This document shows, piece by piece, positions 1,919-54,780 of a stretch of DNA of 64,000 nt (position 1 is its first letter; each line of letters opens with the position of its first letter). The position numbers and the translations under genes are program-made. The notes under the pieces are model-generated. The model worked only from the letters and a program-made list of their open reading frames with translations. It did not search any database and was not told the DNA's origin. The DNA is taken from positions 124,001 through 188,000 of the IMG/VR virus record IMGVR_UViG_3300042558_003926; one strand, 5' to 3'.

Positions 1919-4414
1919 ATGTTTGTAATAAAAAGAGACGGTTCTAAGGAACCCGTTAGGTTTGAAAAAGTTTCTAATAGAATTAAAAAAATGACTTATG
2001 GTCTAAATCCTGATCATATTGATTCTTTAGAGATTGCGCAAAAAGTTATTGCCGGAATCTACGATGGAATTTCTACACAGGAGTTAGACAATCTTGCAGC
2101 TGAAACTGCAGCATCGCTTATCCCAAATCACCCAGATTATTCAATATTAGCTTCAAGAATAGCAGTTTCTAGATTGCATAAGACAACTAAGAAGAAGTTT
2201 TCTGAAACGATAGAAGATCTTTATAGCTATATAGATCCTGAAACTAATACTCCAGCAGGTCTTATTAACGACGAGACATATAAGGTCGTTATGAAGAATA
2301 AACAGAAACTGGATGGAGCCATCATACACGAGAGGGACTTTAATTTCGAATATTTTGGATTCAAAACATTGGAGAAGAGTTATCTTTTAAAGACATATGG
2401 GGAGACAACGGAAACTCCTCAGCATATGTACATGCGAGTAGCAGTTGGTATATGGGGAGATAATCTGAAGAATGTAATTAAAACATACGAGTTACTTTCT
2501 AATCATTTAATGACCCACGCAACGCCAACATTATTTAATGCTGGAACAAAAAAACCACAGCTATCTTCTTGTTTTCTTTTAATGATGTCGGATGATTCTA
2601 TTCCCGGAATCTATAAGACGTTATCCGATGTTGCTGTTATCTCTCAGAATGCCGGAGGTATAGGACTTGCTATTCATAACGTTAGAAGTACGGGTTCTTA
2701 TATTAAAGGAACAAACGGAACTTCCAATGGAATTGTTCCTATGCTAAAAGTTTTCAACGAAACTGCAAGATATGTAGATCAAGGTGGAGGCAAAAGAAAA
2801 GGATCTTTTGCTATTTATGTAGAACCATGGCATGCTGACATTGAGTCTTTTCTAGATCTTAGAAAGAATACAGGGAAAGAAGAACTTAGAGCAAGAGATT
2901 TATTTTTGGCTTTATGGACCCCTGACTTATTTATGAAGAGGGTTAAAGAGAGCGGAGAATGGTCATTATTTTCTCCTTCTGATGTTCCTGGGCTTTGGGA
3001 ATTATACGGAGAGGATTTCGAGAAAGCTTATATCGATGCTGAACTTTCAGGAAAGGCTAGAAAGACAATAAAAGCCAGGGATTTATGGACAAAAATTATT
3101 GATTCACAAATCGAGACCGGAACTCCATATATGCTTTATAAGGATGCTGCTAACAAAAAATCAAATCAGCAAAATCTTGGTACAATAAAAAGTTCTAATC
3201 TTTGTACGGAGATCTTAGAATATACTTCTAAGGACGAGCAAGCTGTTTGTAACCTTGCATCTATCCCGGTAAATAAATTCTTAAAATCTACAGACAATAG
3301 GACTTCAAAGATAGCCAGAGGAAAATGTGAGGTTGATCATAAAGCCTTATATGATGTAGCTTACCAAACAGCTATCAACCTAAATAAGGTTATTGACGTT
3401 AACTATTACCCGACAAAAGAAACTGAGAGATCTAACATGAGACACCGTCCAATCGGTATCGGTATACAAGGTCTAGCAGATCTTTTTGCAATTATGGGTA
3501 TTCCTTTTACTTGTTTAGAGGCTAAGAAAATAAACGAGGAAGTATTTGAGACAATTTACTTTGCGTCAATGTCCGCTTCAATGGACTTAGCTAGAAGAGA
3601 CGGAAAATATGAAACATTTGACGGTTCACCACTTAGCAAAGGAGATTTCCAATTTAACCTTTGGGGATTCAAAGACGAACAACTTTCCGGAAGATGGGAT
3701 TGGGCTAAATTGAGAAAGGAAGTAATGAAACACGGAGCAAGAAACTCTTTGCTTTTAGCTCCAATGCCAACTGCTTCCACTGCACAAATAATGGGTAACA
3801 ACGAGGCTTTTGAACCTTTTACATCCAATATCTATACCAGAAGAACACTAAGTGGTGAGTTTATTCTTGTAAATAAACATCTAGTTAGGGATCTTATTTC
3901 TTTAGGTCTATGGAGCGATGATATGAAAAACATGATTATCCTACATAAGGGATCGGTTCAGAATATTCCACAAATACCAGAAGCTGTTAGAGAAACATAT
4001 AAAACTGTATGGGAAATAAAGCAGAAGGATCTAATAGATATGTCTGCTGGAAGAGGCAAATTTATTTGCCAATCACAATCACTAAATCTCTTTATAGAGA
4101 ATGTTAATGCTGCTAAATTAACTTCGGCACATTTCCATTCTTGGGAATTAGGACTAAAAACAGGAATGTACTACTTAAGGACTAAATCAGCGGTGGATGC
4201 AATTGCTGGTTTGGGTATAGACATGGAAAAGGCAAAGAAATCTTTGAAAACAACAGAGGAAAAAATTCCAACTCCAGTAAAAGAAAATACCGAGGAGAAG
4301 ATAGATATGCTTGGCATGACAAGCGAAGAACTAAGTAAGGCAGCAGAAAATATGATGTCTGATATAGTTTGTAGCTTAGACAATCCTGACGATTGTCTTG
4401 CTTGCGGATCATAA
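1919..4414 (+). CDS. nrdA: Class Ia ribonucleotide reductase alpha subunit
   Basis: ATP cone (VIKRDG), TPTLFNAGT, SSCF, NLCTE catalytic motif, C-terminal CxxC (CLAC). Confidence 0.97.
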   Translation: MFVIKRDGSKEPVRFEKVSNRIKKMTYGLNPDHIDSLEIAQKVIAGIYDGISTQELDNLAAETAASLIPNHPDYSILASRIAVSRLHKTTKKKFSETIEDLYSYIDPETNTPAGLINDETYKVVMKNKQKLDGAIIHERDFNFEYFGFKTLEKSYLLKTYGETTETPQHMYMRVAVGIWGDNLKNVIKTYELLSNHLMTHATPTLFNAGTKKPQLSSCFLLMMSDDSIPGIYKTLSDVAVISQNAGGIGLAIHNVRSTGSYIKGTNGTSNGIVPMLKVFNETARYVDQGGGKRKGSFAIYVEPWHADIESFLDLRKNTGKEELRARDLFLALWTPDLFMKRVKESGEWSLFSPSDVPGLWELYGEDFEKAYIDAELSGKARKTIKARDLWTKIIDSQIETGTPYMLYKDAANKKSNQQNLGTIKSSNLCTEILEYTSKDEQAVCNLASIPVNKFLKSTDNRTSKIARGKCEVDHKALYDVAYQTAINLNKVIDVNYYPTKETERSNMRHRPIGIGIQGLADLFAIMGIPFTCLEAKKINEEVFETIYFASMSASMDLARRDGKYETFDGSPLSKGDFQFNLWGFKDEQLSGRWDWAKLRKEVMKHGARNSLLLAPMPTASTAQIMGNNEAFEPFTSNIYTRRTLSGEFILVNKHLVRDLISLGLWSDDMKNMIILHKGSVQNIPQIPEAVRETYKTVWEIKQKDLIDMSAGRGKFICQSQSLNLFIENVNAAKLTSAHFHSWELGLKTGMYYLRTKSAVDAIAGLGIDMEKAKKSLKTTEEKIPTPVKENTEEKIDMLGMTSEELSKAAENMMSDIVCSLDNPDDCLACGS

Positions 4415-9793: not shown

Positions 9794-10723
9794 ATGGGAA
9801 GATACGGATATTGTTGTATAAATATGAGTCTTTCTGATAGAAAGATCTCTACTAACAGAGGAATGGTAAAGAAAACATTTCTAGAGAAAGGTATAGCATA
9901 TGCTTCAGAGCTAGCTTTAAAGAATGTAATAGATCTAAGAGAAATCTTGCAATGGAATTATGACAACGGAATACAGATGTATAGGATGTCCAGTGATATA
10001 TTTCCTTGGTGCTCCGAATATGAAATAAAGGACCTACCTGATTATGATGCAATCTCGGCCGTTTTAAAAGCATGCGGTTTTTTTGCAATAATGAATGACC
10101 AAAGAATAACATTTCATCCCTCACCATACGGAGTTCTAGCTTCCGAACGTCCCGATGTGGTGGAGAAGGCAATAAAGGAACTTTCTCAACATGCGGAGAT
10201 ATTCGATCTGATGGGACTAGACAAAAGCCATAAGTATCCGATCAATATTCACATAAATACAACGAAGCCAACAAAAGAGGATGCAGCAGACAGATTCTGT
10301 CGTAATTACGAGGTACTCCCGGATTCAGTAAAGGCTAGACTAGTCTTGGAAGTTGATGATAAGAAATCACAATTTCACGCGGAGGATCTTTACGAGATGG
10401 TCCATAAAAGAATTGGTATCCCAGTAACTTTTGATTATCTACATAACAAATGTAACCCATCCTCTCTTAGCGAGCGTGATGCACTGGCATTGTGTGTTAG
10501 CACCTGGCCAGAGGGTATTGTTCCGATAACTCATTATTCGGATTCTAGAAAAATCTTCGAGGATTCTTCTGCTAAGGAAGTAGCTCATTCCGATTGGATT
10601 TGGGAATCACCCGAAACTTATGGGCTTGAGATCGATATAGAATTTGAAGTTAAAATGAAAGATTTAGCTTTACTTAAATACATAAAAGAAAAGGAACTGC
10701 TATATGAAGTCAAAAAATTCTAA
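9794..10723 (+). CDS. uvsE: UV damage endonuclease
   Basis: GYCCIN, RMSSDIFP, RITFHP, LEVDD, TFDYLH, HYSDS, H-S-D and EVKMKD motifs. Confidence 0.92.
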   Translation: MGRYGYCCINMSLSDRKISTNRGMVKKTFLEKGIAYASELALKNVIDLREILQWNYDNGIQMYRMSSDIFPWCSEYEIKDLPDYDAISAVLKACGFFAIMNDQRITFHPSPYGVLASERPDVVEKAIKELSQHAEIFDLMGLDKSHKYPINIHINTTKPTKEDAADRFCRNYEVLPDSVKARLVLEVDDKKSQFHAEDLYEMVHKRIGIPVTFDYLHNKCNPSSLSERDALALCVSTWPEGIVPITHYSDSRKIFEDSSAKEVAHSDWIWESPETYGLEIDIEFEVKMKDLALLKYIKEKELLYEVKKF

Positions 10724-16785: not shown

Positions 16786-18243
16786 ATGCCATCAAATAGA
16801 GTTCTCGATTTTTTCTCCTATATTAATGAGGCTAAGGTAGACACCACAAAAATAGTGGTTCTGACCGGTAACGTTAAGGGAAGTAAGACTTCATCGTCTT
16901 TTGAGAAAGAGTGTAAGAAAAGAAAAATAGAATGCTATATAGTAGACGTAAACGATGCTATTATAGAGAAAACATACAATGGACACACATTTAAGACGGG
17001 GGACAAGGAAATCCAAATAGACCCGAACTCTACTGTAATTGTACCAAGAAGAGGAGTTTTAGAAAACTCATACACTAAGCAGATCCTTTCATATCTGGAG
17101 GATTCCAGATATTTTACAGTAAACACTTTGGAATCTATGGAAGTGTGCGAGAATAAGTATTTAACTTCTCAGATATTGGAGGAGAGTGGTTTACCAGTTC
17201 CTAAATGTGCTTTAGTTCCCAATGAGGATTTTCTAGATTCCGCTCTAAAACAAATAGGTGGTAAATTCCCAGTAGTTATGAAGCTGCTTGCAGGAACTCA
17301 GGGAATAGGAGTTTCTATAGTTGATTCGTACTCTTCATTGAAATCTGTCTACCAAACCATCAGAAAGCTAGATGGAGATAATGAGATTTTAATCCAAGAA
17401 AAAATAGATTCCAACTTTGATCTTAGAATTCAAGTTATAATCAAGAAATTCGACCCTTTACAGCCAGATCCTGATAACTGCATTATCCTGGGATCGATGA
17501 AAAGACAGGCGGTTAAGAAAGACTTTAGAACCAACTATTCTTTAGGTGGATCTGTTTCGAAATACAACATATCTAAAGAAATAGAAGAAATTGCATGTAA
17601 AGCGGCAAATGCAGTAGGTTGCCATTGGTGTGGGGTTGATATTATGATAGATTCTAAAACTAAGAAGCCTTATATACTGGAAGTTAATTCCTCTCCTGGT
17701 ACGGAAGGAATATCGCAAGCAATCGGAAAGCCTATAGTTGATGACGTTATAAATTATCTTGTTGAAAAGAGCAACTGGTCTTATTCCAATTTAGAAATAG
17801 GATACTTAGAAACTATAGAGATACCAGGAATTGGTAATATAGTAGCTAAGTTTGATACCGGAAACGGAGCAAAATCATGCAGTATGCACTGTGATGAGGT
17901 TGAAGAGGTTGACGGTAAGCTAAAATGGAAAATCGGTAAGAAGAATTTTGTTAGCGATATCGTGGGATATTCGGATGCCGAAGTAGGTAGGGATATACAC
18001 ACTAGACCAATAATAGAGATGGACATAATGTTCCACGGTGTTCTGGTACCTGCAGTTAAGATTTCTCCAGTCGACAGGACAGAGAAAAGCACACCATTCT
18101 TAGCAAATAGAGGATTTATGAGAAGACTTGGTCTAATTGTTAATCCATATAAAGCCTTTGTGGTTTCAGAAGAACCTAAAGGAGGATATCAGGTTGGGGC
18201 TTCTAAGGGTAAATCCCACGCAGGAATTAAATTCGAAAAATAA
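16786..18243 (+). CDS. RimK-like ATP-grasp ligase fused to retropepsin-like (DTG) protease domain
   Basis: CENKYLT, GTQGIGV, IQEKI, FRTNYSLGG, GVDI, EVNSSPG. C-terminal AKFDTGNGA. Confidence 0.88.
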   Translation: MPSNRVLDFFSYINEAKVDTTKIVVLTGNVKGSKTSSSFEKECKKRKIECYIVDVNDAIIEKTYNGHTFKTGDKEIQIDPNSTVIVPRRGVLENSYTKQILSYLEDSRYFTVNTLESMEVCENKYLTSQILEESGLPVPKCALVPNEDFLDSALKQIGGKFPVVMKLLAGTQGIGVSIVDSYSSLKSVYQTIRKLDGDNEILIQEKIDSNFDLRIQVIIKKFDPLQPDPDNCIILGSMKRQAVKKDFRTNYSLGGSVSKYNISKEIEEIACKAANAVGCHWCGVDIMIDSKTKKPYILEVNSSPGTEGISQAIGKPIVDDVINYLVEKSNWSYSNLEIGYLETIEIPGIGNIVAKFDTGNGAKSCSMHCDEVEEVDGKLKWKIGKKNFVSDIVGYSDAEVGRDIHTRPIIEMDIMFHGVLVPAVKISPVDRTEKSTPFLANRGFMRRLGLIVNPYKAFVVSEEPKGGYQVGASKGKSHAGIKFEK

Positions 18244-18839: not shown

Positions 18840-20270
18840 ATGGATCTAGTTTCAGCTTTACAACAATCTAATACAACTACCGAGAATGGAATGGTAACAA
18901 ATTCTAGCTCTCTTGATAACTGCGTTGATATGTTTTTTAAAATCGGAGCTTTTAGATCTGCGGAAGAAGCTGATGTGATTAGAGTTTTTTCTCTTGCCTT
19001 TTCAGAGGATCCGGTTTCCGCTTTAAGAATTCTTTTCTGGGCTAGAGACATCAGAGGTGGTGCTGGAGAGAGAAGAGTTTTTAGAATATGCCTGGAATAT
19101 CTTTCCAAAGCTAATAGAGAGGCTATAGTTAGGAACATGCCTCTTATCTCTGAATATGGAAGATGGGATGATTTGCTTGTATTTTTCGGTACGGATCTTC
19201 AGGACGAGGCAGCAAAGTTAATTAAGGGTGCTCTGGATTCTGAGAATGGTCTTTGTGCTAAATGGATGCCTAGAAAGGGATTTGTTGCTAACGAGCTTAG
19301 AAAGTTCATGGGAATGACACCGAAGGATTATCGTAAGACCCTTGTTTCTCTTACTAATGTGGTTGAGCAGAATATGTGTTCCGGTAAATGGGAAGACATT
19401 AACTATTCGCAGGTTCCTTCTGTAGCTGCTGCCAGATACCAGAGAGCTTTCTATAAAAGAGACACAGAAAGGTATGCAGAATACATTAGACTCTTATCTC
19501 TTCCTGCAGAATCTAGACCGGAAGGAGTAAAGATAAATGCGCAAGCCGTTTATCCATACGATGTTCTAAAATCAATCAGAAAAGGTAACGAAGACGTAGC
19601 AACCGCCCAGTGGAACGAACTTCCCGATTATATGGAGGGAAGCTCAGATATGATATTACCTGTAGTGGACGTATCCGGATCTATGACAACCGGGATTTCT
19701 AGCGGATCATCTTTAACCTGTATGGATGTTGCAATTTCTCTTGGACTTTACATCTCCGAAAGAAATGTGGGGCCTTTCCAGGATCACTTCATCACATTTA
19801 GTGAAAGACCTGAACTCCAAAAACTAAAGGGTAATCTTTACGAGAGATATCACCAATTAGAATCTTCTGAGTGGGGGATGTCTACTAATTTAGAATCGGT
19901 GTTTGATTTAGTTTTGCGTCAGGCTATTAAACATAACGTGGGTAAAGAATCGATGCCAACTAAGATATTGATTCTTTCCGATATGGAATTCAACCAGGCC
20001 ATTCGTGGAGGAGAAAGCGTTTCAGCTATAGAGATGATCAGAGGAAAGTACGAGAAAGCTGGATATGATATGCCATCTATTATATTCTGGAACATTCAGA
20101 GTAGGAGTGGAGGAAATAATGTTCCGGTTAGATTCGATGAGTCGGGAACTGCTTTAATCTCCGGATTTTCGCCTTCCATTTTGAAATCGATACTCTCAGG
20201 GAATAACATTACTCCTATTGATATTATGCAAGAGACGATAAATTCGGAAAGATATAAAAATATATCATAA
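18840..20270 (+). CDS. TROVE-like/vWA protein (DUF2828-type)
   Basis: RDIRGGAGERRVF, YGRWDDL, AKWMPRKG. vWA MIDAS motif DVSGSM and ILSDMEF. Confidence 0.85.
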   Translation: MDLVSALQQSNTTTENGMVTNSSSLDNCVDMFFKIGAFRSAEEADVIRVFSLAFSEDPVSALRILFWARDIRGGAGERRVFRICLEYLSKANREAIVRNMPLISEYGRWDDLLVFFGTDLQDEAAKLIKGALDSENGLCAKWMPRKGFVANELRKFMGMTPKDYRKTLVSLTNVVEQNMCSGKWEDINYSQVPSVAAARYQRAFYKRDTERYAEYIRLLSLPAESRPEGVKINAQAVYPYDVLKSIRKGNEDVATAQWNELPDYMEGSSDMILPVVDVSGSMTTGISSGSSLTCMDVAISLGLYISERNVGPFQDHFITFSERPELQKLKGNLYERYHQLESSEWGMSTNLESVFDLVLRQAIKHNVGKESMPTKILILSDMEFNQAIRGGESVSAIEMIRGKYEKAGYDMPSIIFWNIQSRSGGNNVPVRFDESGTALISGFSPSILKSILSGNNITPIDIMQETINSERYKNIS

Positions 20271-20274
20271 TCAA

Positions 20275-20304
20275 TGAAACATTATCTTCAGACCAATATA
20301 TAAA
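20275..20304 (+). promoter_or_regulatory. Putative promoter TGAAAC-N18-TATAAA for an ncRNA cassette
   Basis: Matches the window-wide motif. The predicted start near 20311 precedes the first stem. Confidence 0.6.
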
Positions 20305-20314
20305 AATAAAATAA

Positions 20315-20399
20315 GGAATCTTTTCAGCAAAACTAACTTACAATTTATGAATATCGATCAGTCTGGTTCTACGGTTCCAGTCGTAAAAAAAGAGATTCC
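20315..20399 (+). ncRNA. Candidate structured ncRNA unit 1 (Y-RNA-like architecture)
   Basis: GGAATCTTTT pairs with AAAGAGATTCC. CAGCAAAAC follows the 5' strand and TTCTACG is internal. Confidence 0.6.
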
Positions 20400-20410
20400 G
20401 TTAACATTAA

Positions 20411-20466
20411 AGGATTGTTACAGCAAAACATATTCTACGCAACTATAGGAAAGAAAAAGCAATCCT
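20411..20466 (+). ncRNA. Candidate structured ncRNA unit 2
   Basis: AGGATTGTT pairs with AGCAATCCT. Same CAGCAAAAC and TTCTACG elements. Confidence 0.6.
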
Positions 20467-20476
20467 GAAACATTAA

Positions 20477-20507
20477 AAGTCCGAGTGAAAGCTCGGACTT
20501 TTTTTTT
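20477..20507 (+). terminator. Rho-independent terminator
   Basis: AAGTCCGAG-TGAAAG-CTCGGACTT followed by a T run. Confidence 0.9.
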
Positions 20508-20559
20508 CTCCCGAGATTATTCCATATGTTTACCAAGCAAACCAATAAAAATATAAGTT

Positions 20560-22573: not shown

Positions 22574-23062
22574 GGGCCCGCTTTGGATTTGACAGGCGGA
22601 GGTAGTTCTTTGAGATGCAGGCAGTCTTAGATTGGAAAGACTTTAATTACCTATCAAACAATAAACGCAAACGTTTACAATTCTGAGGATATCATGAGTA
22701 TCCCAACTTCACTTACTCGTTCGGTAGTAACTGAAGAGGTTGAGCTAGCTGTTGCAGCCTAACCAATTGGCGGCAACTGCCAATCATAAAAGAAAGTTGC
22801 AAGCTGGCAAGAAAAAAGGTTCGTAGTATTGCCTATTTGACATTGAGTGGAACCTTGAGGATTAGTCCAATACCCATTTAGATCGTCACTATCAATGTCA
22901 GTGAAACTTGGCTAATACCTGGGAGTAGACCAGACTGAGCGTTAAGTCTGAAAGAAAAAAGAAACGCACCCAAAGTTTGTTGATGTCAAACAATCAACTA
23001 AGCCTGTGAATGAGTCCAATGGACATTCGATCTGGACGAGGGTTCGACCCCCTCCGGGTCCA
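22574..23062 (+). ncRNA. ssrA: tmRNA (about 489 nt)
   Basis: 5' GGGCCCG pairs with 3' CGGGTCC+A, giving the G3-U70 Ala determinant. GATTTGACAGG D-loop analog, GGTTCGACCCC T-arm, internal tag ORF ending LAVAA. CCA is not encoded. Confidence 0.93.
22667..22762 (+). other. tmRNA tag reading frame ANVYNSEDIMSIPTSLTRSVVTEEVELAVAA*
   Basis: GCA resume codon after ATAAAC. Ends in AVAA-TAA. Confidence 0.8.
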
Positions 23063-23070
23063 CTAAATTA

Positions 23071-23099
23071 ATCCCATCCTCTACCGGATGGGATTTTTT
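23071..23099 (+). terminator. Terminator after ssrA
   Basis: ATCCCATCC / GGATGGGAT followed by a T run. Confidence 0.85.
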
Positions 23100-32871: not shown

Positions 32872-33942
32872 ATGAATAAAACTAAATTCGATTTCGATGA
32901 TATCCTGATTCAACCTTCTATAGTTAGCGATATATCTTCTCGTAGTGAGGTTACCGTTACATATAATGATGGGTACCTCCCTCTATTTACTGCTCCTATG
33001 GATACTGTAGTTAGCGAGAATAATATTGAACTTTTTCAGGCTAAAGGGATAAGAGTTGTGAAGCCAAGAACCCTGAATACACCATACAGTGGTTATGGAA
33101 CGGATTTCAATGAATTCATTTCTCTTGGTTTAGACGAATTCATTAAAATTTATCTAGGTAAAAAAAAGAATGAATATGATGACCAGATGTTTATTCTCAT
33201 CGACATTGCAAATGGGCATATGAGAAAGCTTATTGATTCTGTTAAGAAAGCTAAAGAAACATACGGTGATTCTTTAATTCTCATGGTGGGTAATATAGCC
33301 AATCCTAAGACATACTCCGATCTTTCCGAAGCAGGAGCTGATTTTGTAAGAGTTGGGATAGGAAACGGCGGAGGTTGCTTAACGACGGTTCAAACTGGAG
33401 TTGGCTATCCTATGGCATCTTTAATTAAAGAATGTTACATCGAAAGCTGTTTGATGAATACCCCCGCGAAGATTGTTGCTGATGGCGGATTTAAAAGCTA
33501 TTCTGATATTATAAAAGCTCTTGGACTAGGAGCAGATTATGTTATGCTTGGTTCAATATTGAATAAAGCTTTGGAGAGCGCAGGTGACACATACTTAGCT
33601 AATACTAAAGGTGAGGGATGGACTGAGCCGGGTGAAAGGATCAATCAATATGCTGCTGAGACAGAGAATCTGTTCAAGTACGGTACTAAGATGTTTAAGA
33701 AGTTTAGAGGGATGAGTACCAAGGAGGCTCAGAAGGCTATGGGTAAGACAGAGTTGAAAACTAGCGAAGGAGTTAGTCGAATGCAACCAGTAGAATACAC
33801 ATTAGAAGGATGGACTGAAAACTTTAGAAGCTACCTTTCCTCCGCAATGAGCTATTCCGATGCAGCCGATCTTAAGAGCTTTATAGGTCTTGCTAAGTTC
33901 AACTACGTAACTCCAAATTCTTTAAACAGATATAAAAAATGA
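32872..33942 (+). CDS. IMPDH/GMP-reductase family protein
   Basis: FDFDDILI, APMDTV, IDIANGH, VGNIAN, VGIGNGGGCLT, ADGG, GADYVMLGS, FRGMS, SEG. Confidence 0.88.
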   Translation: MNKTKFDFDDILIQPSIVSDISSRSEVTVTYNDGYLPLFTAPMDTVVSENNIELFQAKGIRVVKPRTLNTPYSGYGTDFNEFISLGLDEFIKIYLGKKKNEYDDQMFILIDIANGHMRKLIDSVKKAKETYGDSLILMVGNIANPKTYSDLSEAGADFVRVGIGNGGGCLTTVQTGVGYPMASLIKECYIESCLMNTPAKIVADGGFKSYSDIIKALGLGADYVMLGSILNKALESAGDTYLANTKGEGWTEPGERINQYAAETENLFKYGTKMFKKFRGMSTKEAQKAMGKTELKTSEGVSRMQPVEYTLEGWTENFRSYLSSAMSYSDAADLKSFIGLAKFNYVTPNSLNRYKK

Positions 33943-53698: not shown

Positions 53699-53926
53699 AT
53701 GGAACTTAATAAAGATCAGAAAAAACACATCGAGGAAGCTCTGGACTTTTATCCGGAGCTTACCTATGAAAACTTAGAAGAAATTCACGAGGAGATTCTC
53801 CATAACATGATAGACGATTTTATCATAGATCTTTCAGATGACGAGGAGGGGGATTTGCATATGACTTACTCAAACCTAGTCTATGATGATCTGGAGGAAA
53901 GAATAAAAAAAATAAAAGCAAAATGA
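53699..53926 (+). CDS. Small acidic protein
   Basis: 75-aa ORF. Confidence 0.5.
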   Translation: MELNKDQKKHIEEALDFYPELTYENLEEIHEEILHNMIDDFIIDLSDDEEGDLHMTYSNLVYDDLEERIKKIKAK

Positions 53927-54780
53927 AAGATGCGCTAGGCGACAGAATGAAGGACTTCTATGAAGACCGAACACGTTACAAGTTGGGACGTCGCACCAAC
54001 ACAATCATCCGTATCGACGGAAAAGCATTCCATACTTACACACGAGGACTTAAACGTCCATTCGACGAAGGGTTAATGGAAGACATGAATCGTACAACTG
54101 AGTACCTATGTCAGAATATCCAAGGAGCAAAATTTGGATACGTTCAATCAGATGAGATTTCAATTCTCATCACTGATTACGATGACATTTCTACACATGC
54201 TTGGTTTGACGGAAACTTGCAGAAAATGGCAAGTATTGCTGCTTCATTGGCAACTGCTGAATTTAATAGACTAAGATTGGCAAGAATTCTTTATGAAGAC
54301 CCGACCAAAGTTTGGGGTGAGATAATCTCATCATATAAACTTGCAATGTTTGATGCACGAGTATTTCAAATCCCTTACCAAGAGGAAGTGATTAACTACT
54401 TTATTTGGAGACAACAAGATGCTACAAGAAATTCTATTTCTTCTGTTGCTCAAGCTTATTTTTCTTCAAAGGAGTTGCACGGTAAGAAAACCAATCAGAT
54501 GCAAGATATGCTAATGTTGGAAAAAGGGATTAACTGGAATGACTTTACCCCTCGTGAAAAAAGAGGAAGTTTGATTCGTAAAGTAGAAAAGAAATTTATC
54601 AAATCGGATTCTATCGAAGATGTAGCAAAAACACCAAACACTGAGAGAATTGATGATAAACACATTTATACTAGATCAAAATTTGAAGCCGATCCGGAAA
54701 CTCCAATCTTTACCCAAGATAAAGACTATCTTAGATTGATGATGCCTCAAGAAAGAGTGACTACAGAATCACTAGTTTGA
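53923..54780 (+). CDS. tRNA-His guanylyltransferase (Thg1-like 3'-5' polymerase)
   Basis: RMKDFYE, RIDGKAFH, YVQSDEIS, FDARV, WRQQD. Confidence 0.93.
   Translation: MKDALGDRMKDFYEDRTRYKLGRRTNTIIRIDGKAFHTYTRGLKRPFDEGLMEDMNRTTEYLCQNIQGAKFGYVQSDEISILITDYDDISTHAWFDGNLQKMASIAASLATAEFNRLRLARILYEDPTKVWGEIISSYKLAMFDARVFQIPYQEEVINYFIWRQQDATRNSISSVAQAYFSSKELHGKKTNQMQDMLMLEKGINWNDFTPREKRGSLIRKVEKKFIKSDSIEDVAKTPNTERIDDKHIYTRSKFEADPETPIFTQDKDYLRLMMPQERVTTESLV

What the first reader, a model, noticed from the sequence alone, without database searches (positions are those of the whole stretch)
18840..20507. TROVE/vWA-like gene followed by its own tandem end-paired ncRNA cassette
Seen: the 290-nt gap has a promoter motif (20275-20304) and a strong terminator (20477-20507) but no ORF. 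It holds two units, each closed by a 9-10 bp terminal stem with different sequence but retained pairing (GGAATCTTTT/AAAGAGATTCC and AGGATTGTT/AGCAATCCT). Both have CAGCAAAAC right after the 5' strand, share an internal TTCTACG, and are followed by AACATTAAA. Known: Ro60/TROVE proteins bind Y RNAs via a stem formed by their 5' and 3' ends, and bacterial Y RNAs lie next to rsr. Inference: a phage ribonucleoprotein of DUF2828-type protein with non-canonical Y-like RNAs, perhaps an RNA quality-control or anti-defense decoy.
Basis: partly seen in the sequence, partly recalled or inferred. Interest (0 to 1): 0.8.

Follow-up and report, generated by a model that had tools for sequence, protein, structure and literature searches.

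The report
Ro-like phage protein with partner RNAs
Beside a phage gene for a ring-shaped, Ro60-like RNA-binding protein lie two small end-paired RNAs of a widespread family absent from Rfam, built like the enigmatic 'Class I' RNAs of social amoebae, which suggests a second, unrecognised branch of the Ro/Y-RNA type of ribonucleoprotein.

Summary
The gap after the DUF2828/DUF7788 gene (18840-20270) carries two tandem units, 20315-20400 and 20411-20467, followed by an intrinsic terminator. Each unit has a 9-10 bp stem joining its ends, an unpaired CAGCAA just after the 5' strand, an A-run before the 3' strand and a G after it.

A covariance model finds only these two sites in the 64-kb window. 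In about 1 Mb of related loci it finds such units almost only beside DUF2828 genes, on the gene's strand. All nine stem pairs covary and CAGCAA is invariant.

The same units occur in cultured phages of Mycobacterium, Staphylococcus, Listeria, Enterococcus, Bacillus, Campylobacter, Ralstonia, Cronobacter, Vibrio (KVP40) and E. coli (Felix O1-like). They often sit inside tRNA arrays.

The protein model superposes over its full length on Ro60. No Rfam family reaches threshold. The only resemblance is to Dictyostelium Class I RNA: same stem, same UUACAGCAA, same CUG end, same size.

Best reading: Y-RNA-like partners of a Ro-like protein. Binding and function are untested. The promoter claim is unsupported, and whether Dictyostelium has a DUF2828 protein could not be checked.

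The parts
18840..20270 (+). Gene for a 476-aa Ro60-fold protein: an N-terminal helical (HEAT/TROVE-like) part, Pfam DUF2828, and a C-terminal vWA part, Pfam DUF7788, with an intact MIDAS motif
   Evidence: Pfam gives DUF7788 at 6.5e-52 and DUF2828 at 2.4e-29. PHROG 850 is named 'RNA-binding protein'. The AF2 model has pLDDT 75. Foldseek against PDB gives 9kop at E 3e-8 and 1yvr at E 1e-6, full length. D277, S279, S281, T349 and D381 are invariant in 26 homologues.
20271..20314 (+). Spacer between the stop codon and unit 1. It is conserved in the two closest relatives. It may be a promoter or a processing site; which is undecided.
   Evidence: Alignment A7. There is no consensus promoter in the scan. 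One metatranscriptome contig identical to the window spans 20208-20357, from inside the gene into unit 1, at depth 2.
20315..20400 (+). RNA unit 1 (about 86 nt). It has a 10-bp terminal stem (20315-20324 with 20390-20399), unpaired CAGCAA at 20325-20330, an inner hairpin at 20363-20380 with a C(UACG)G loop, an A-run at 20384-20389, and a trailing G20400.
   Evidence: R1 gives E 1.2e-6 and R2 gives E 7e-7; this unit was not in the seed. Fold. The inner hairpin covaries in L002 and L003.
20401..20410 (+). Spacer between the units, part of the repeated AACATTAAA. It is a likely processing region.
   Evidence: Sequence. Partly conserved in L002 and L003. The processing role is inferred.
20411..20467 (+). 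RNA unit 2 (about 57 nt). It has a 9-bp terminal stem (20411-20419 with 20458-20466), UUACAGCAA at 20418-20426, an A-run, and a 3' end reading ...CCUG (G20467).
   Evidence: R1 gives E 1e-10 and R2 gives E 3.7e-10. Weak full-length match to RF01414 Dicty_Class_I_RNA at 15.7 bits. Fold.
20475..20510 (+). Intrinsic terminator that closes the cassette: a 12-bp stem, a GAAA loop and a T9 run
   Evidence: Terminator scan. Identical in L002 and L003. Relatives' cassettes also end in a terminator.

Best explanation
The gap encodes two small stable RNAs of one family. Each is closed by a helix between its own 5' and 3' ends. Each shows a single-stranded (U)UACAGCAA just above the 5' strand and ends in ...CC(U)G.

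They are most likely the dedicated RNA partners of the adjacent Ro60-fold DUF2828/DUF7788 protein. In that reading they are the functional counterpart of Y RNAs for Ro60. The protein would recognise the stem plus CAGCAA module. The variable inner part is a simple hairpin here and a tRNA-like T/D-arm module in some relatives. It would gate the ring or tether other factors.

The cassette is probably transcribed with, or just after, the gene and ended by the terminator at 20475-20510. It would then be cut into pieces of about 86 and 57 nt. In other phages the same units are released from tRNA polycistrons.

Status of each step:

- Shown: the RNA family is real (conservation, covariation, specificity), it is linked to DUF2828 genes on the same strand, and the protein has the Ro60 fold.
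- Inferred: physical binding, processing, and a role in RNA or tRNA surveillance or repair, or in countering host RNA-directed defence, during infection.
For: **Specificity**
- R1 and R2 hit only the two units in the 64-kb window.
- In 495 kb of 74 viral loci, 75 of 76 hits lie on the gene strand just downstream of the gene.
- In 431 kb of 80 independent genome or MAG loci (35-57% protein identity), all 32 hits with E<0.01 are on the gene strand. All but one lie within about 700 nt upstream or 450 nt downstream of the gene; the exception is 2 kb downstream.
- A rule-based detector finds a unit near the gene in 113 of 135 distinct loci. Density is 0.98 per kb there, against 0.10 per kb on the opposite strand.

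**Covariation**
- In 53 units, 94% of cells are paired, against 31-50% for slid structures.
- All 9 pairs have double changes, and 0 of 500 shuffles reach the score.
- CAGCAA and the G after the 3' strand are invariant.

**Reverse test (RNA to protein)**
- An RNA-only pattern found 73 IMG/VR loci. Of these, 42 carry a DUF2828 gene, always on the same strand. In 41 of the 42 the gene is within 768 nt.
- About 14 of the remaining loci sit in tRNA arrays. Six of these are on contigs whose other locus holds the gene.

**Cultured phages with units beside the gene or in the neighbouring tRNA array**
- Kahlid, 6ec, LP-048, pinkbiff, S13, F341, phage 113, Skywalker, RSP15 and KVP40.
- Controls without hits: KVP40 1-50 kb and the T4 tRNA region.

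**Protein**
- Ro60 fold and MIDAS motif.

**Y-RNA-like modularity**
- Some units carry T- and D-arm-like inserts, and one gives a partial YrlA match.
Against: - No binding, expression or processing data exist. The only RNA-level trace is one depth-2 metatranscriptome contig, which could be DNA carry-over.
- Sequence-profile similarity of the protein to Ro60 is not significant. The AF2 model is of moderate quality (pLDDT 75, TM about 0.55).
- The Ro-binding motif of known Y RNAs (GNCGAA or GGUCCGA) is absent.
- In Dictyostelium the one protein shown to bind a look-alike RNA directly is an RRM protein, Rnp1A, not a Ro-like protein.
- Units also occur kilobases from the gene inside tRNA arrays. 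The linkage could therefore partly reflect shared residence in the tRNA region.
Confidence: 0.7

Rival explanations
1. The units are stable small RNAs of the phage tRNA region that act without the DUF2828 protein. They might, for example, bind a host RRM- or Hfq-type protein or serve as decoys for tRNA-directed nucleases. Their closeness to DUF2828 would only reflect that both live in the tRNA cluster.
For: Many units sit between tRNA genes on the tRNA strand, some far from the gene. The Dictyostelium look-alike binds an RRM protein directly.
Against: In the window and its freshwater relatives there is no tRNA array at the locus, yet the units follow the gene directly. In the reverse test the commonest neighbour of a genuine unit is a DUF2828 gene, within 768 nt and always on the same strand. 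T4 has a tRNA cluster and no unit was found there. No DUF2828 homologue was noted in T4, but this was not searched for specifically.
Confidence: 0.15
2. The units are cis-acting elements of the DUF2828 mRNA. They would be autoregulatory operators in the 5' or 3' UTR, or stabilising and processing structures, rather than trans-acting RNAs.
For: The units lie 20-130 nt upstream of the start codon in many lineages and just after the stop codon in others. A metatranscriptome contig bridges the gene and unit 1.
Against: The units form tandem arrays of 2-3 divergent copies. Copies occur between tRNA genes several kb away in the same genome. Inner modules of up to about 250 nt are conserved. The position flips between upstream and downstream across lineages.
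Confidence: 0.08
3. The array is an RNA antidote that neutralises a toxic protein, in the manner of a type III toxin-antitoxin system.
For: The layout is tandem RNA units plus a terminator next to a protein gene. [quoted passage not shown]
Against: The units are not identical repeats. The protein has a Ro60 ring plus vWA fold, not an endoribonuclease fold. The order of RNA and gene is not fixed.
Confidence: 0.04
4. The two stems and shared words are a chance or repeat-element artefact.
For: The gap is A+T-rich, and single-sequence fold z-scores of the separate units are modest at -1.7 to -1.8.
Against: Covariation, invariant motifs, strand and position specificity, and recurrence across phages of at least five bacterial phyla.
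Confidence: 0.01

Closest known systems
Dictyostelium Class I RNAs (Rfam RF01414; Aspegren 2004, Avesson 2011, Kjellin 2021, PMC7919456)
   Same: - A short covarying stem joins the 5' and 3' ends.
- A single-stranded 11-nt motif, CCUUACAGCAA, lies directly after the 5' strand. Its Dictyostelid-invariant C6, C9, A10 and A11 are also invariant in the phage units.
- Both have a conserved 5' G and a 3' ...CUG(U).
- The middle is variable and the length is about 55-65 nt.
- RF01414 is the only Rfam family matched. Matches are full-length: 15.7 bits for window unit 2, 18.9 for Kahlid and 28.2 for L030.
   Different: - All scores fall below Rfam's gathering score of 41.5.
- The phage units are clustered, co-oriented with a Ro-like gene or with tRNAs, and lack the eukaryotic DUSE promoter.
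- Phage stems are longer, at 7-10 bp.
- Some units carry inserts of 100-250 nt.
- Class I RNAs were reported as unique to Dictyostelia, and their known direct binder is the RRM protein Rnp1A.
- Homology versus convergence is not settled.
Bacterial and phage Y RNAs (YrlA RF02553, Yrn1; Chen 2014, PMC4201824; Thermus phage phiLo Yrl1 and Yrl2, PMC12135203)
   Same: - They are encoded next to, and on the strand of, a Ro60-fold protein, often in several copies.
- The ends pair into a stem with a short conserved motif near the 5' strand.
- The inner module is variable and in some members mimics tRNA T and D arms.
   Different: - The motif is CAGCAA rather than GNCGAAN0-1G or CGAA.
- The partner protein is DUF2828/DUF7788, not Pfam TROVE.
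- There is no YrlA or Y_RNA match in the window.
- The window's units have no tRNA-like domain.
Ro60 / Rsr (TROVE plus vWA ring proteins; PDB 1yvr, 9kop)
   Same: Full-length structural superposition, helical ring plus vWA, and an intact MIDAS motif.
   Different: No significant sequence or profile match. The protein belongs to separate Pfam families. RNA binding has not been shown.
T4 stable RNAs C and D (species 1 and 2) in the tRNA cluster
   Same: Small stable RNAs of unknown function encoded within a phage tRNA array.
   Different: They do not match the model: no unit with E below 0.2 in the T4 tRNA region.

Membership tests
Y RNA / YrlA (Ro60-associated RNAs) | Encoded near, and on the strand of, a Ro60 orthologue | tested here: inconclusive
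   The units are adjacent and co-oriented. The neighbour is a Ro60-fold protein of another Pfam family, DUF2828/DUF7788, not TROVE.
Y RNA / YrlA (Ro60-associated RNAs) | Stem formed by the 5' and 3' ends | tested here: met
   9-10 bp terminal stems, 94% paired, all pairs covary.
Y RNA / YrlA (Ro60-associated RNAs) | Ro-binding motif GNCGAAN0-1G (bacteria) or GGUCCGA bulged helix (animals) | tested here: not met
   The invariant motif is CAGCAA. The definition of the known motif comes from PMC4201824.
Y RNA / YrlA (Ro60-associated RNAs) | tRNA-like T and D arm domain (YrlA); Rfam gathering score | tested here: not met
   No Y_RNA or YrlA hit in the window, even at E up to 10. Relatives give only a partial YrlA match of 21.4 bits against a gathering score of 69.
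Dictyostelium Class I RNA (RF01414) | Short covarying stem joining the ends, with a conserved 5' G and 3' CUG(U) | tested here: met
   Unit 2 reads AGG...CCUG and unit 1 reads GG...CCG. The G after the 3' strand is invariant in 53 units.
Dictyostelium Class I RNA (RF01414) | 11-nt CCUUACAGCAA next to the 5' strand (U3, C6, C9, A10, A11 near-invariant) | tested here: met
   Window unit 2 has UUACAGCAA and unit 1 has UUUUCAGCAA. Many relatives have the full CCUUACAGCAA.
Dictyostelium Class I RNA (RF01414) | Length 42-65 nt (a few up to about 85 nt) | tested here: met
   Unit 2 is about 57 nt and unit 1 about 86 nt. Sizes in Dictyostelia come from PMC7919456.
Dictyostelium Class I RNA (RF01414) | Rfam gathering score of 41.5 bits | tested here: not met
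   15.7 bits for window unit 2, and 28.2 bits for the best relative.
Dictyostelium Class I RNA (RF01414) | DUSE promoter about 60 nt upstream; binding by Rnp1A | not testable with these tools
   These are eukaryote-specific or experimental features.
Ro60 / TROVE proteins | Pfam TROVE (PF05731) plus vWA_Ro60 sequence match | tested here: not met
   Pfam gives DUF2828 and DUF7788 only. PDB sequence and profile searches are not significant.
Ro60 / TROVE proteins | HEAT-repeat ring plus vWA fold with MIDAS | tested here: met
   Foldseek gives 9kop at E 3e-8 and 1yvr at E 1e-6, with about 500 aligned columns. The DxSxS...T...D residues are invariant. The model is of moderate quality.
Type III toxin-antitoxin (ToxIN-like) | Array of near-identical RNA repeats processed by an adjacent endoribonuclease toxin | tested here: not met
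   The units differ in stem and interior. The protein has the Ro60 fold.

The most novel reading that the evidence does not exclude
DUF2828/DUF7788 proteins and Class I-type RNAs (stem plus UUACAGCAA plus CUG end) form an ancient second lineage of Ro/Y-type ribonucleoproteins. It would be shared by tailed phages of many bacterial phyla, probably by giant viruses, and by eukaryotes. The Dictyostelium Class I RNAs, thought unique to social amoebae and of unknown mechanism, would be its eukaryotic members. A Dictyostelid DUF2828-type protein would be their missing partner. One candidate to check is DDB_G0281243, a protein of unknown function that was pulled down with DdR-21.
Probability: 0.3. Interest if true: 0.92.

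Novelty: new variant of a known kind. Interest (0 to 1): 0.85.

Why it matters
**An unannotated RNA class in model phages.** It would add an abundant noncoding RNA class to phage genomes, including well-studied ones: KVP40, Felix O1-like phages, Listeria and Staphylococcus phages, and cluster L-type mycobacteriophages.

**A partner for a very large protein family.** At least 7951 related clusters were found in one search. The family currently carries only a DUF label or a bare 'RNA-binding protein' name. A concrete RNA partner would make its function directly testable in tractable hosts.

**A link to RNA repair.** The units and the gene sit in or beside tRNA arrays, near RtcB, RNA ligase, Thg1-like and tmRNA genes. 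This ties them to tRNA and RNA damage, repair or defence-evasion biology, as with the bacterial rsr-yrlA-rtcB operon.

**A lead on Dictyostelium Class I RNAs.** Their mechanism has been open since 2004. The near-identity of architecture offers a specific hypothesis, a Ro-like partner, and a bacterial or phage system in which to study it.

Tried and rejected
- **Rfam 15.** At gathering thresholds on the window and 20 loci it reports only tmRNA and tRNAs. In E-value mode the terminator attracts spurious sRNA matches such as MicC and Leu_leader. YrlA appears only as a partial sub-threshold match in a mycobacteriophage unit.
- **Promoters.** Sigma-70-type and T4-late-type promoter readings of 20275-20304 are not supported by the scan or by motif enrichment.
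- **Expression.** Two lake metatranscriptomes hold only scattered depth-2-3 contigs of this phage. One bridges the gene and unit 1. This is too thin to show discrete RNAs, and the single read-laying run is now used.
- **Long units in relatives (181-257 nt).** The single-sequence fold is no better than shuffles. RNAalifold recovers only the terminal stem and two small hairpins.
- **T4 rnaC and rnaD.** They do not belong to this family.
- **Dictyostelium DUF2828 protein.** I could not test for one. The homology search lists only the 120 best of at least 7951 hits, all phage-like. The Atlas shows only viral and Ro60 clusters. Avesson 2011 is not held.
- **Literature.** No paper was found that links DUF2828, Class I RNAs and Y RNAs. 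The library is incomplete, so prior description elsewhere cannot be excluded.
- **Other readings rejected on anatomy.** Type III TA array, CRISPR-like or REP-like repeat, and a coding reading of the 33-aa ORF.
Full report
**What is in the window**

The ORF at 18840-20270 (+) encodes a 476-aa protein. Pfam assigns DUF2828 to its N-terminus and DUF7788 to its C-terminus. PHROG 850 is named 'RNA-binding protein'.

- Unit 1 spans 20315-20400. Its stem is GGAATCTTTT with AAGAGATTCC.
- Unit 2 spans 20411-20467. Its stem is AGGATTGTT with AGCAATCCT.

Both units have CAGCAAAAC after the 5' strand, an A-run before the 3' strand and a G after it. A strong intrinsic terminator follows at 20475-20510. MFE folds keep both terminal stems and leave CAGCAA unpaired.

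Unit 1 also holds an inner hairpin at 20363-20380 with a C(UACG)G tetraloop. It is not conserved in relatives.

Small ORFs of up to 36 aa overlap the gap on the two strands, the largest within it on the + strand being 33 aa. The closest relatives differ there by indels that are not multiples of three.

The window is part of a lake-water jumbo phage; the identical locus lies on a 289,651-bp IMG/VR contig. The window also encodes:

- ribonucleotide reductase, topoisomerase II, family B DNA polymerase, thymidylate synthase, DnaJ and UvdE;
- a gp23-like capsid protein;
- a Thg1-like enzyme;
- a tmRNA (22574-23065) and one tRNA-Lys.

**The units belong to a real, conserved RNA family**

Homologues of the protein at 55-92% identity in 80 IMG/VR loci are almost always followed by two or three such units and a terminator. 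The units sit directly after the gene, or after one small inserted ORF.

The stems differ between lineages but stay complementary. Examples of the 5' strand are GGAATC, GGATTG, GGATAG, GAATGA, GGTTTC, GGTTCC, GGATCG, GGAACG and GAGTGG.

I built a covariance model (R1) from 25 short units with a nine-pair terminal stem. On the seed alignment 92% of cells are paired, against 26-61% for slid structures, and 0 of 500 shuffles reach the covariation score.

Results with R1:

- In the whole window it finds only unit 2 (E 1e-10) and unit 1 (E 1.2e-6). Unit 1 was not in the seed.
- In 495 kb of 74 viral loci, 75 of 76 hits are on the gene strand just downstream of the gene.
- In 431 kb of 80 independent loci from bacterial and archaeal genome assemblies, many of them MAGs (35-57% protein identity), all 32 hits with E<0.01 are on the gene strand. 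All but one lie within about 700 nt upstream or 450 nt downstream of the gene; one lies 2 kb downstream.

A 53-unit alignment across these sets shows the following:

- 94% of cells are paired.
- All nine pairs have changes on both sides.
- C, G and C of CAGCAA are invariant in all 53 units, and its three A's are kept in 50-52 of 53.
- The G after the 3' strand is invariant.

This alignment was fitted to the model, which favours the structure. The seed count on the MAFFT alignment and the slid controls point the same way.

The broader model R2, run with filters off, again finds only the two units in the window.

A simple rule-based detector (stem, then C[AT]GCAA, then G) finds a unit near the gene in 113 of 135 distinct loci. 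Density there is 0.98 per kb, against 0.19 per kb elsewhere on that strand and 0.10 per kb on the other strand.

**Reverse test, from RNA to protein**

An RNA-only pattern (GGTT, two free bases, TTACAGCAA, a gap of 25-55, AACCTG) found 73 IMG/VR loci.

- 42 loci contain a DUF2828 homologue, always on the same strand as the unit. In 41 of the 42 it is within 768 nt.
- About 14 of the 31 others lie inside tRNA arrays on the tRNA strand and have full stem complementarity. Six of these are on contigs whose other locus holds the gene.
- The rest have only the 4-bp GGTT/AACC match inside ORFs. Their number is about what chance predicts.

**Range in cultured phages**

tblastn finds the protein in 711 phage records. 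I looked at ten of them, and units with stem plus ACAGCAA are present in every one.

| Phage | Position of units |
|---|---|
| Mycobacterium phage Kahlid | three units after the 'Ro-like RNA binding protein' gene; the middle one has T-arm and D-arm-like hairpins and a partial YrlA match |
| Staphylococcus phage 6ec | three units downstream |
| Listeria phage LP-048 | two units upstream; an RtcB-like ligase gene lies nearby |
| Felix O1-like Escherichia phage pinkbiff | between tRNA genes downstream |
| Cronobacter phage S13 | after two tRNAs; T-arm-like insert |
| Campylobacter phage F341 | two units between the tRNAs and the gene |
| Enterococcus phage 113 | two units upstream |
| Bacillus phage Skywalker | within and after the tRNA array |
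| Ralstonia phage RSP15 | among tRNAs downstream |
| Vibrio phage KVP40 | inside the tRNA cluster |

KVP40 has no unit beside the gene. All R2 hits in a 50-kb stretch fall inside the tRNA cluster, which ends 3.4 kb upstream of the gene on the same strand. The first 50 kb of KVP40 give no hit. In nine of the ten phages the gene lies within 3.5 kb of tRNA genes.

T4's tRNA region, including the stable RNAs C and D, gives no hit.

**The protein**

There is no significant sequence or profile match to any PDB chain. An AlphaFold2 model built from a 26-sequence alignment has pLDDT 75 and pTM 0.61. It shows a helical N-terminal two-thirds and an alpha/beta C-terminal third.

Foldseek against PDB puts two structures on top, both over about 500 aligned columns. 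They are the Thermus phage phiLo Ro60 (9kop, E 3e-8, TM 0.55-0.57) and Xenopus Ro60 (1yvr, E 1e-6). All other hits are vWA domains only.

The MIDAS residues (DxSxS, T, D) are invariant. With DUF7788-bearing clusters removed, most of the nearest protein-language-model clusters (69 of the 100 hits, and all of the top-ranked ones) carry TROVE plus vWA_Ro60. They include animal RO60. Related models exist in giant viruses of protists, and DUF2828 proteins are encoded by plants.

'TROVE/vWA-like' is therefore supported at the fold level. The protein is not a member of Pfam TROVE.

**Comparison with known RNAs**

Bacterial and phage Y RNAs are encoded next to Ro60 on the same strand. They pair their ends, carry GNCGAAN0-1G (or CGAA) near the 5' strand, and often have a tRNA-like domain. 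The present units share the layout and the modularity. They do not share the motif, and they do not match Y_RNA or YrlA.

The only Rfam family they resemble is RF01414, the Class I RNA of Dictyostelium. Matches are full-length:

- 15.7 bits for window unit 2;
- 18.9 bits for Kahlid;
- 28.2 bits for L030, where it is the only hit among 4227 families in that 401-nt stretch, at E 0.0024.

The gathering score is 41.5, so by Rfam's criterion these are not members.

The defining features given by Kjellin et al. (PMC7919456) are nevertheless all present:

- a short covarying stem joining the ends;
- the 11-nt CCUUACAGCAA directly after the 5' strand, whose Dictyostelid-invariant C6, C9, A10 and A11 are also invariant in phages;
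- a conserved 5' G and a 3' CUG(U);
- a variable middle and a length of about 60 nt.

That paper reports Class I RNAs as absent outside Dictyostelia. Their mechanism is unknown. One of them, DdR-21, binds the RRM protein Rnp1A directly. It also pulled down GuaB, NdkC and DDB_G0281243, a protein of unknown function.

I could not test whether Dictyostelia encode a DUF2828 protein. I found no paper linking these RNAs to Ro, Y RNA or DUF2828.

**How it most likely works**

Shown:

- The RNA family exists.
- Its structure is under selection.
- It is linked on the same strand to a Ro60-fold gene across phages whose hosts span Actinobacteria, Firmicutes, Proteobacteria (gamma, beta and epsilon) and, judging by contig labels, other phyla.

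Inferred:

- The protein binds the stem plus CAGCAA module, as Ro60 binds the Y RNA stem.
- The variable inner part gates the ring or tethers other factors. It is a UNCG hairpin in the window, tRNA-like arms elsewhere, and a conserved 181-257-nt module in many freshwater relatives.
- The particle acts on RNA during infection.

The RNA repair context fits a role in tRNA or RNA surveillance or repair, or in countering RNA-directed host defences. That context includes tRNA arrays, RtcB-like ligase, RNA ligase, Thg1-like enzyme and tmRNA. It parallels the bacterial rsr-yrlA-rtcB operon, which I cite from established knowledge. This part is speculation.

Unit ends are probably made by processing. 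In tRNA arrays the units sit 6-10 nt from the neighbouring tRNAs. RNase P and 3' trimming would therefore release them. In the window, the two units are each followed by AACATTAAA and share one terminator.

The promoter proposed at 20275-20304 is not supported by the scans. The 45 nt before unit 1 are conserved. One depth-2 metatranscriptome contig runs from the gene into unit 1. Read-through from the gene is thus at least as likely as a separate start. Expression remains essentially untested.

**Verdict**

- The promoter, the TTCTACG motif and the functional guesses are not supported.
- The feature is a new variant of the Ro/Y-RNA kind of system.
- Its RNA is architecturally the same as the Dictyostelium Class I RNA. 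This is an unexpected connection and is worth direct experimental test.

Noticed in passing
window 22574-23065 (+): A phage-encoded tmRNA (Rfam 85.5 bits; ARAGORN tag peptide EEVELAVAA) lies 2.1 kb downstream of the RNA cassette, followed by a terminator at 23070-23095. It is also present in relatives L002 and L003.
   Followed up: partly
window 53923-54777 (+) and 32872-33939 (+): A Thg1-like tRNA-His guanylyltransferase (a tRNA 5'-end repair type enzyme) and an IMPDH/GMP-reductase-like protein. GuaB (IMPDH) was one of four proteins pulled down with the Dictyostelium Class I RNA DdR-21. This is probably coincidence.
   Followed up: no
L017:4510-4759, L033:4506-4751, L013:4794-4974 and 11 others (alignment A6): Most freshwater relatives carry a second, long unit of 181-257 nt. 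It is closed by the same stem plus CAGCAA and has long invariant sequence blocks inside. It has no Rfam match and no convincing consensus fold beyond the terminal stem and two small hairpins.
   Followed up: partly
L006:4433-4610 versus L007:4430-4560: Two near-identical loci differ by an indel of about 53 nt. The indel removes the T-arm-like GGTTCAAACCC hairpin from unit 1, so the inner module is gained or lost as a block. These first units also use CUGCAA instead of CAGCAA.
   Followed up: no
L082:3860-3980 and 3990-4102 (Cronobacter phage S13); L245:8301-8416, 9967-10213 (KVP40 'tRNA-Pseudo'): These are over-long tRNA genes of 113-124 nt. The two in S13 share an insert of about 45 nt. They could be intron-bearing tRNAs or another tRNA-derived RNA class next to the units.
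   Followed up: no
L246:2908-3171 (T4 rnaC, rnaD): T4's stable RNAs of unknown function in the tRNA cluster do not match the unit model. They are a different kind of RNA.
   Followed up: yes
window 16786-18243 (+): A RimK-like ATP-grasp ligase (485 aa) lies two small ORFs upstream of the Ro-like gene. Any relation to the cassette is unknown.
   Followed up: no
literature: PMC13148394 (mycobacteriophage LeBron gp53): A 472-aa 'Ro-like RNA-binding protein' of a cluster L1 mycobacteriophage is moderately toxic when overexpressed alone in M. smegmatis. The same phage encodes an RNA ligase and a polynucleotide kinase. Whether gp53 belongs to the same family as the window protein was not tested.
   Followed up: no
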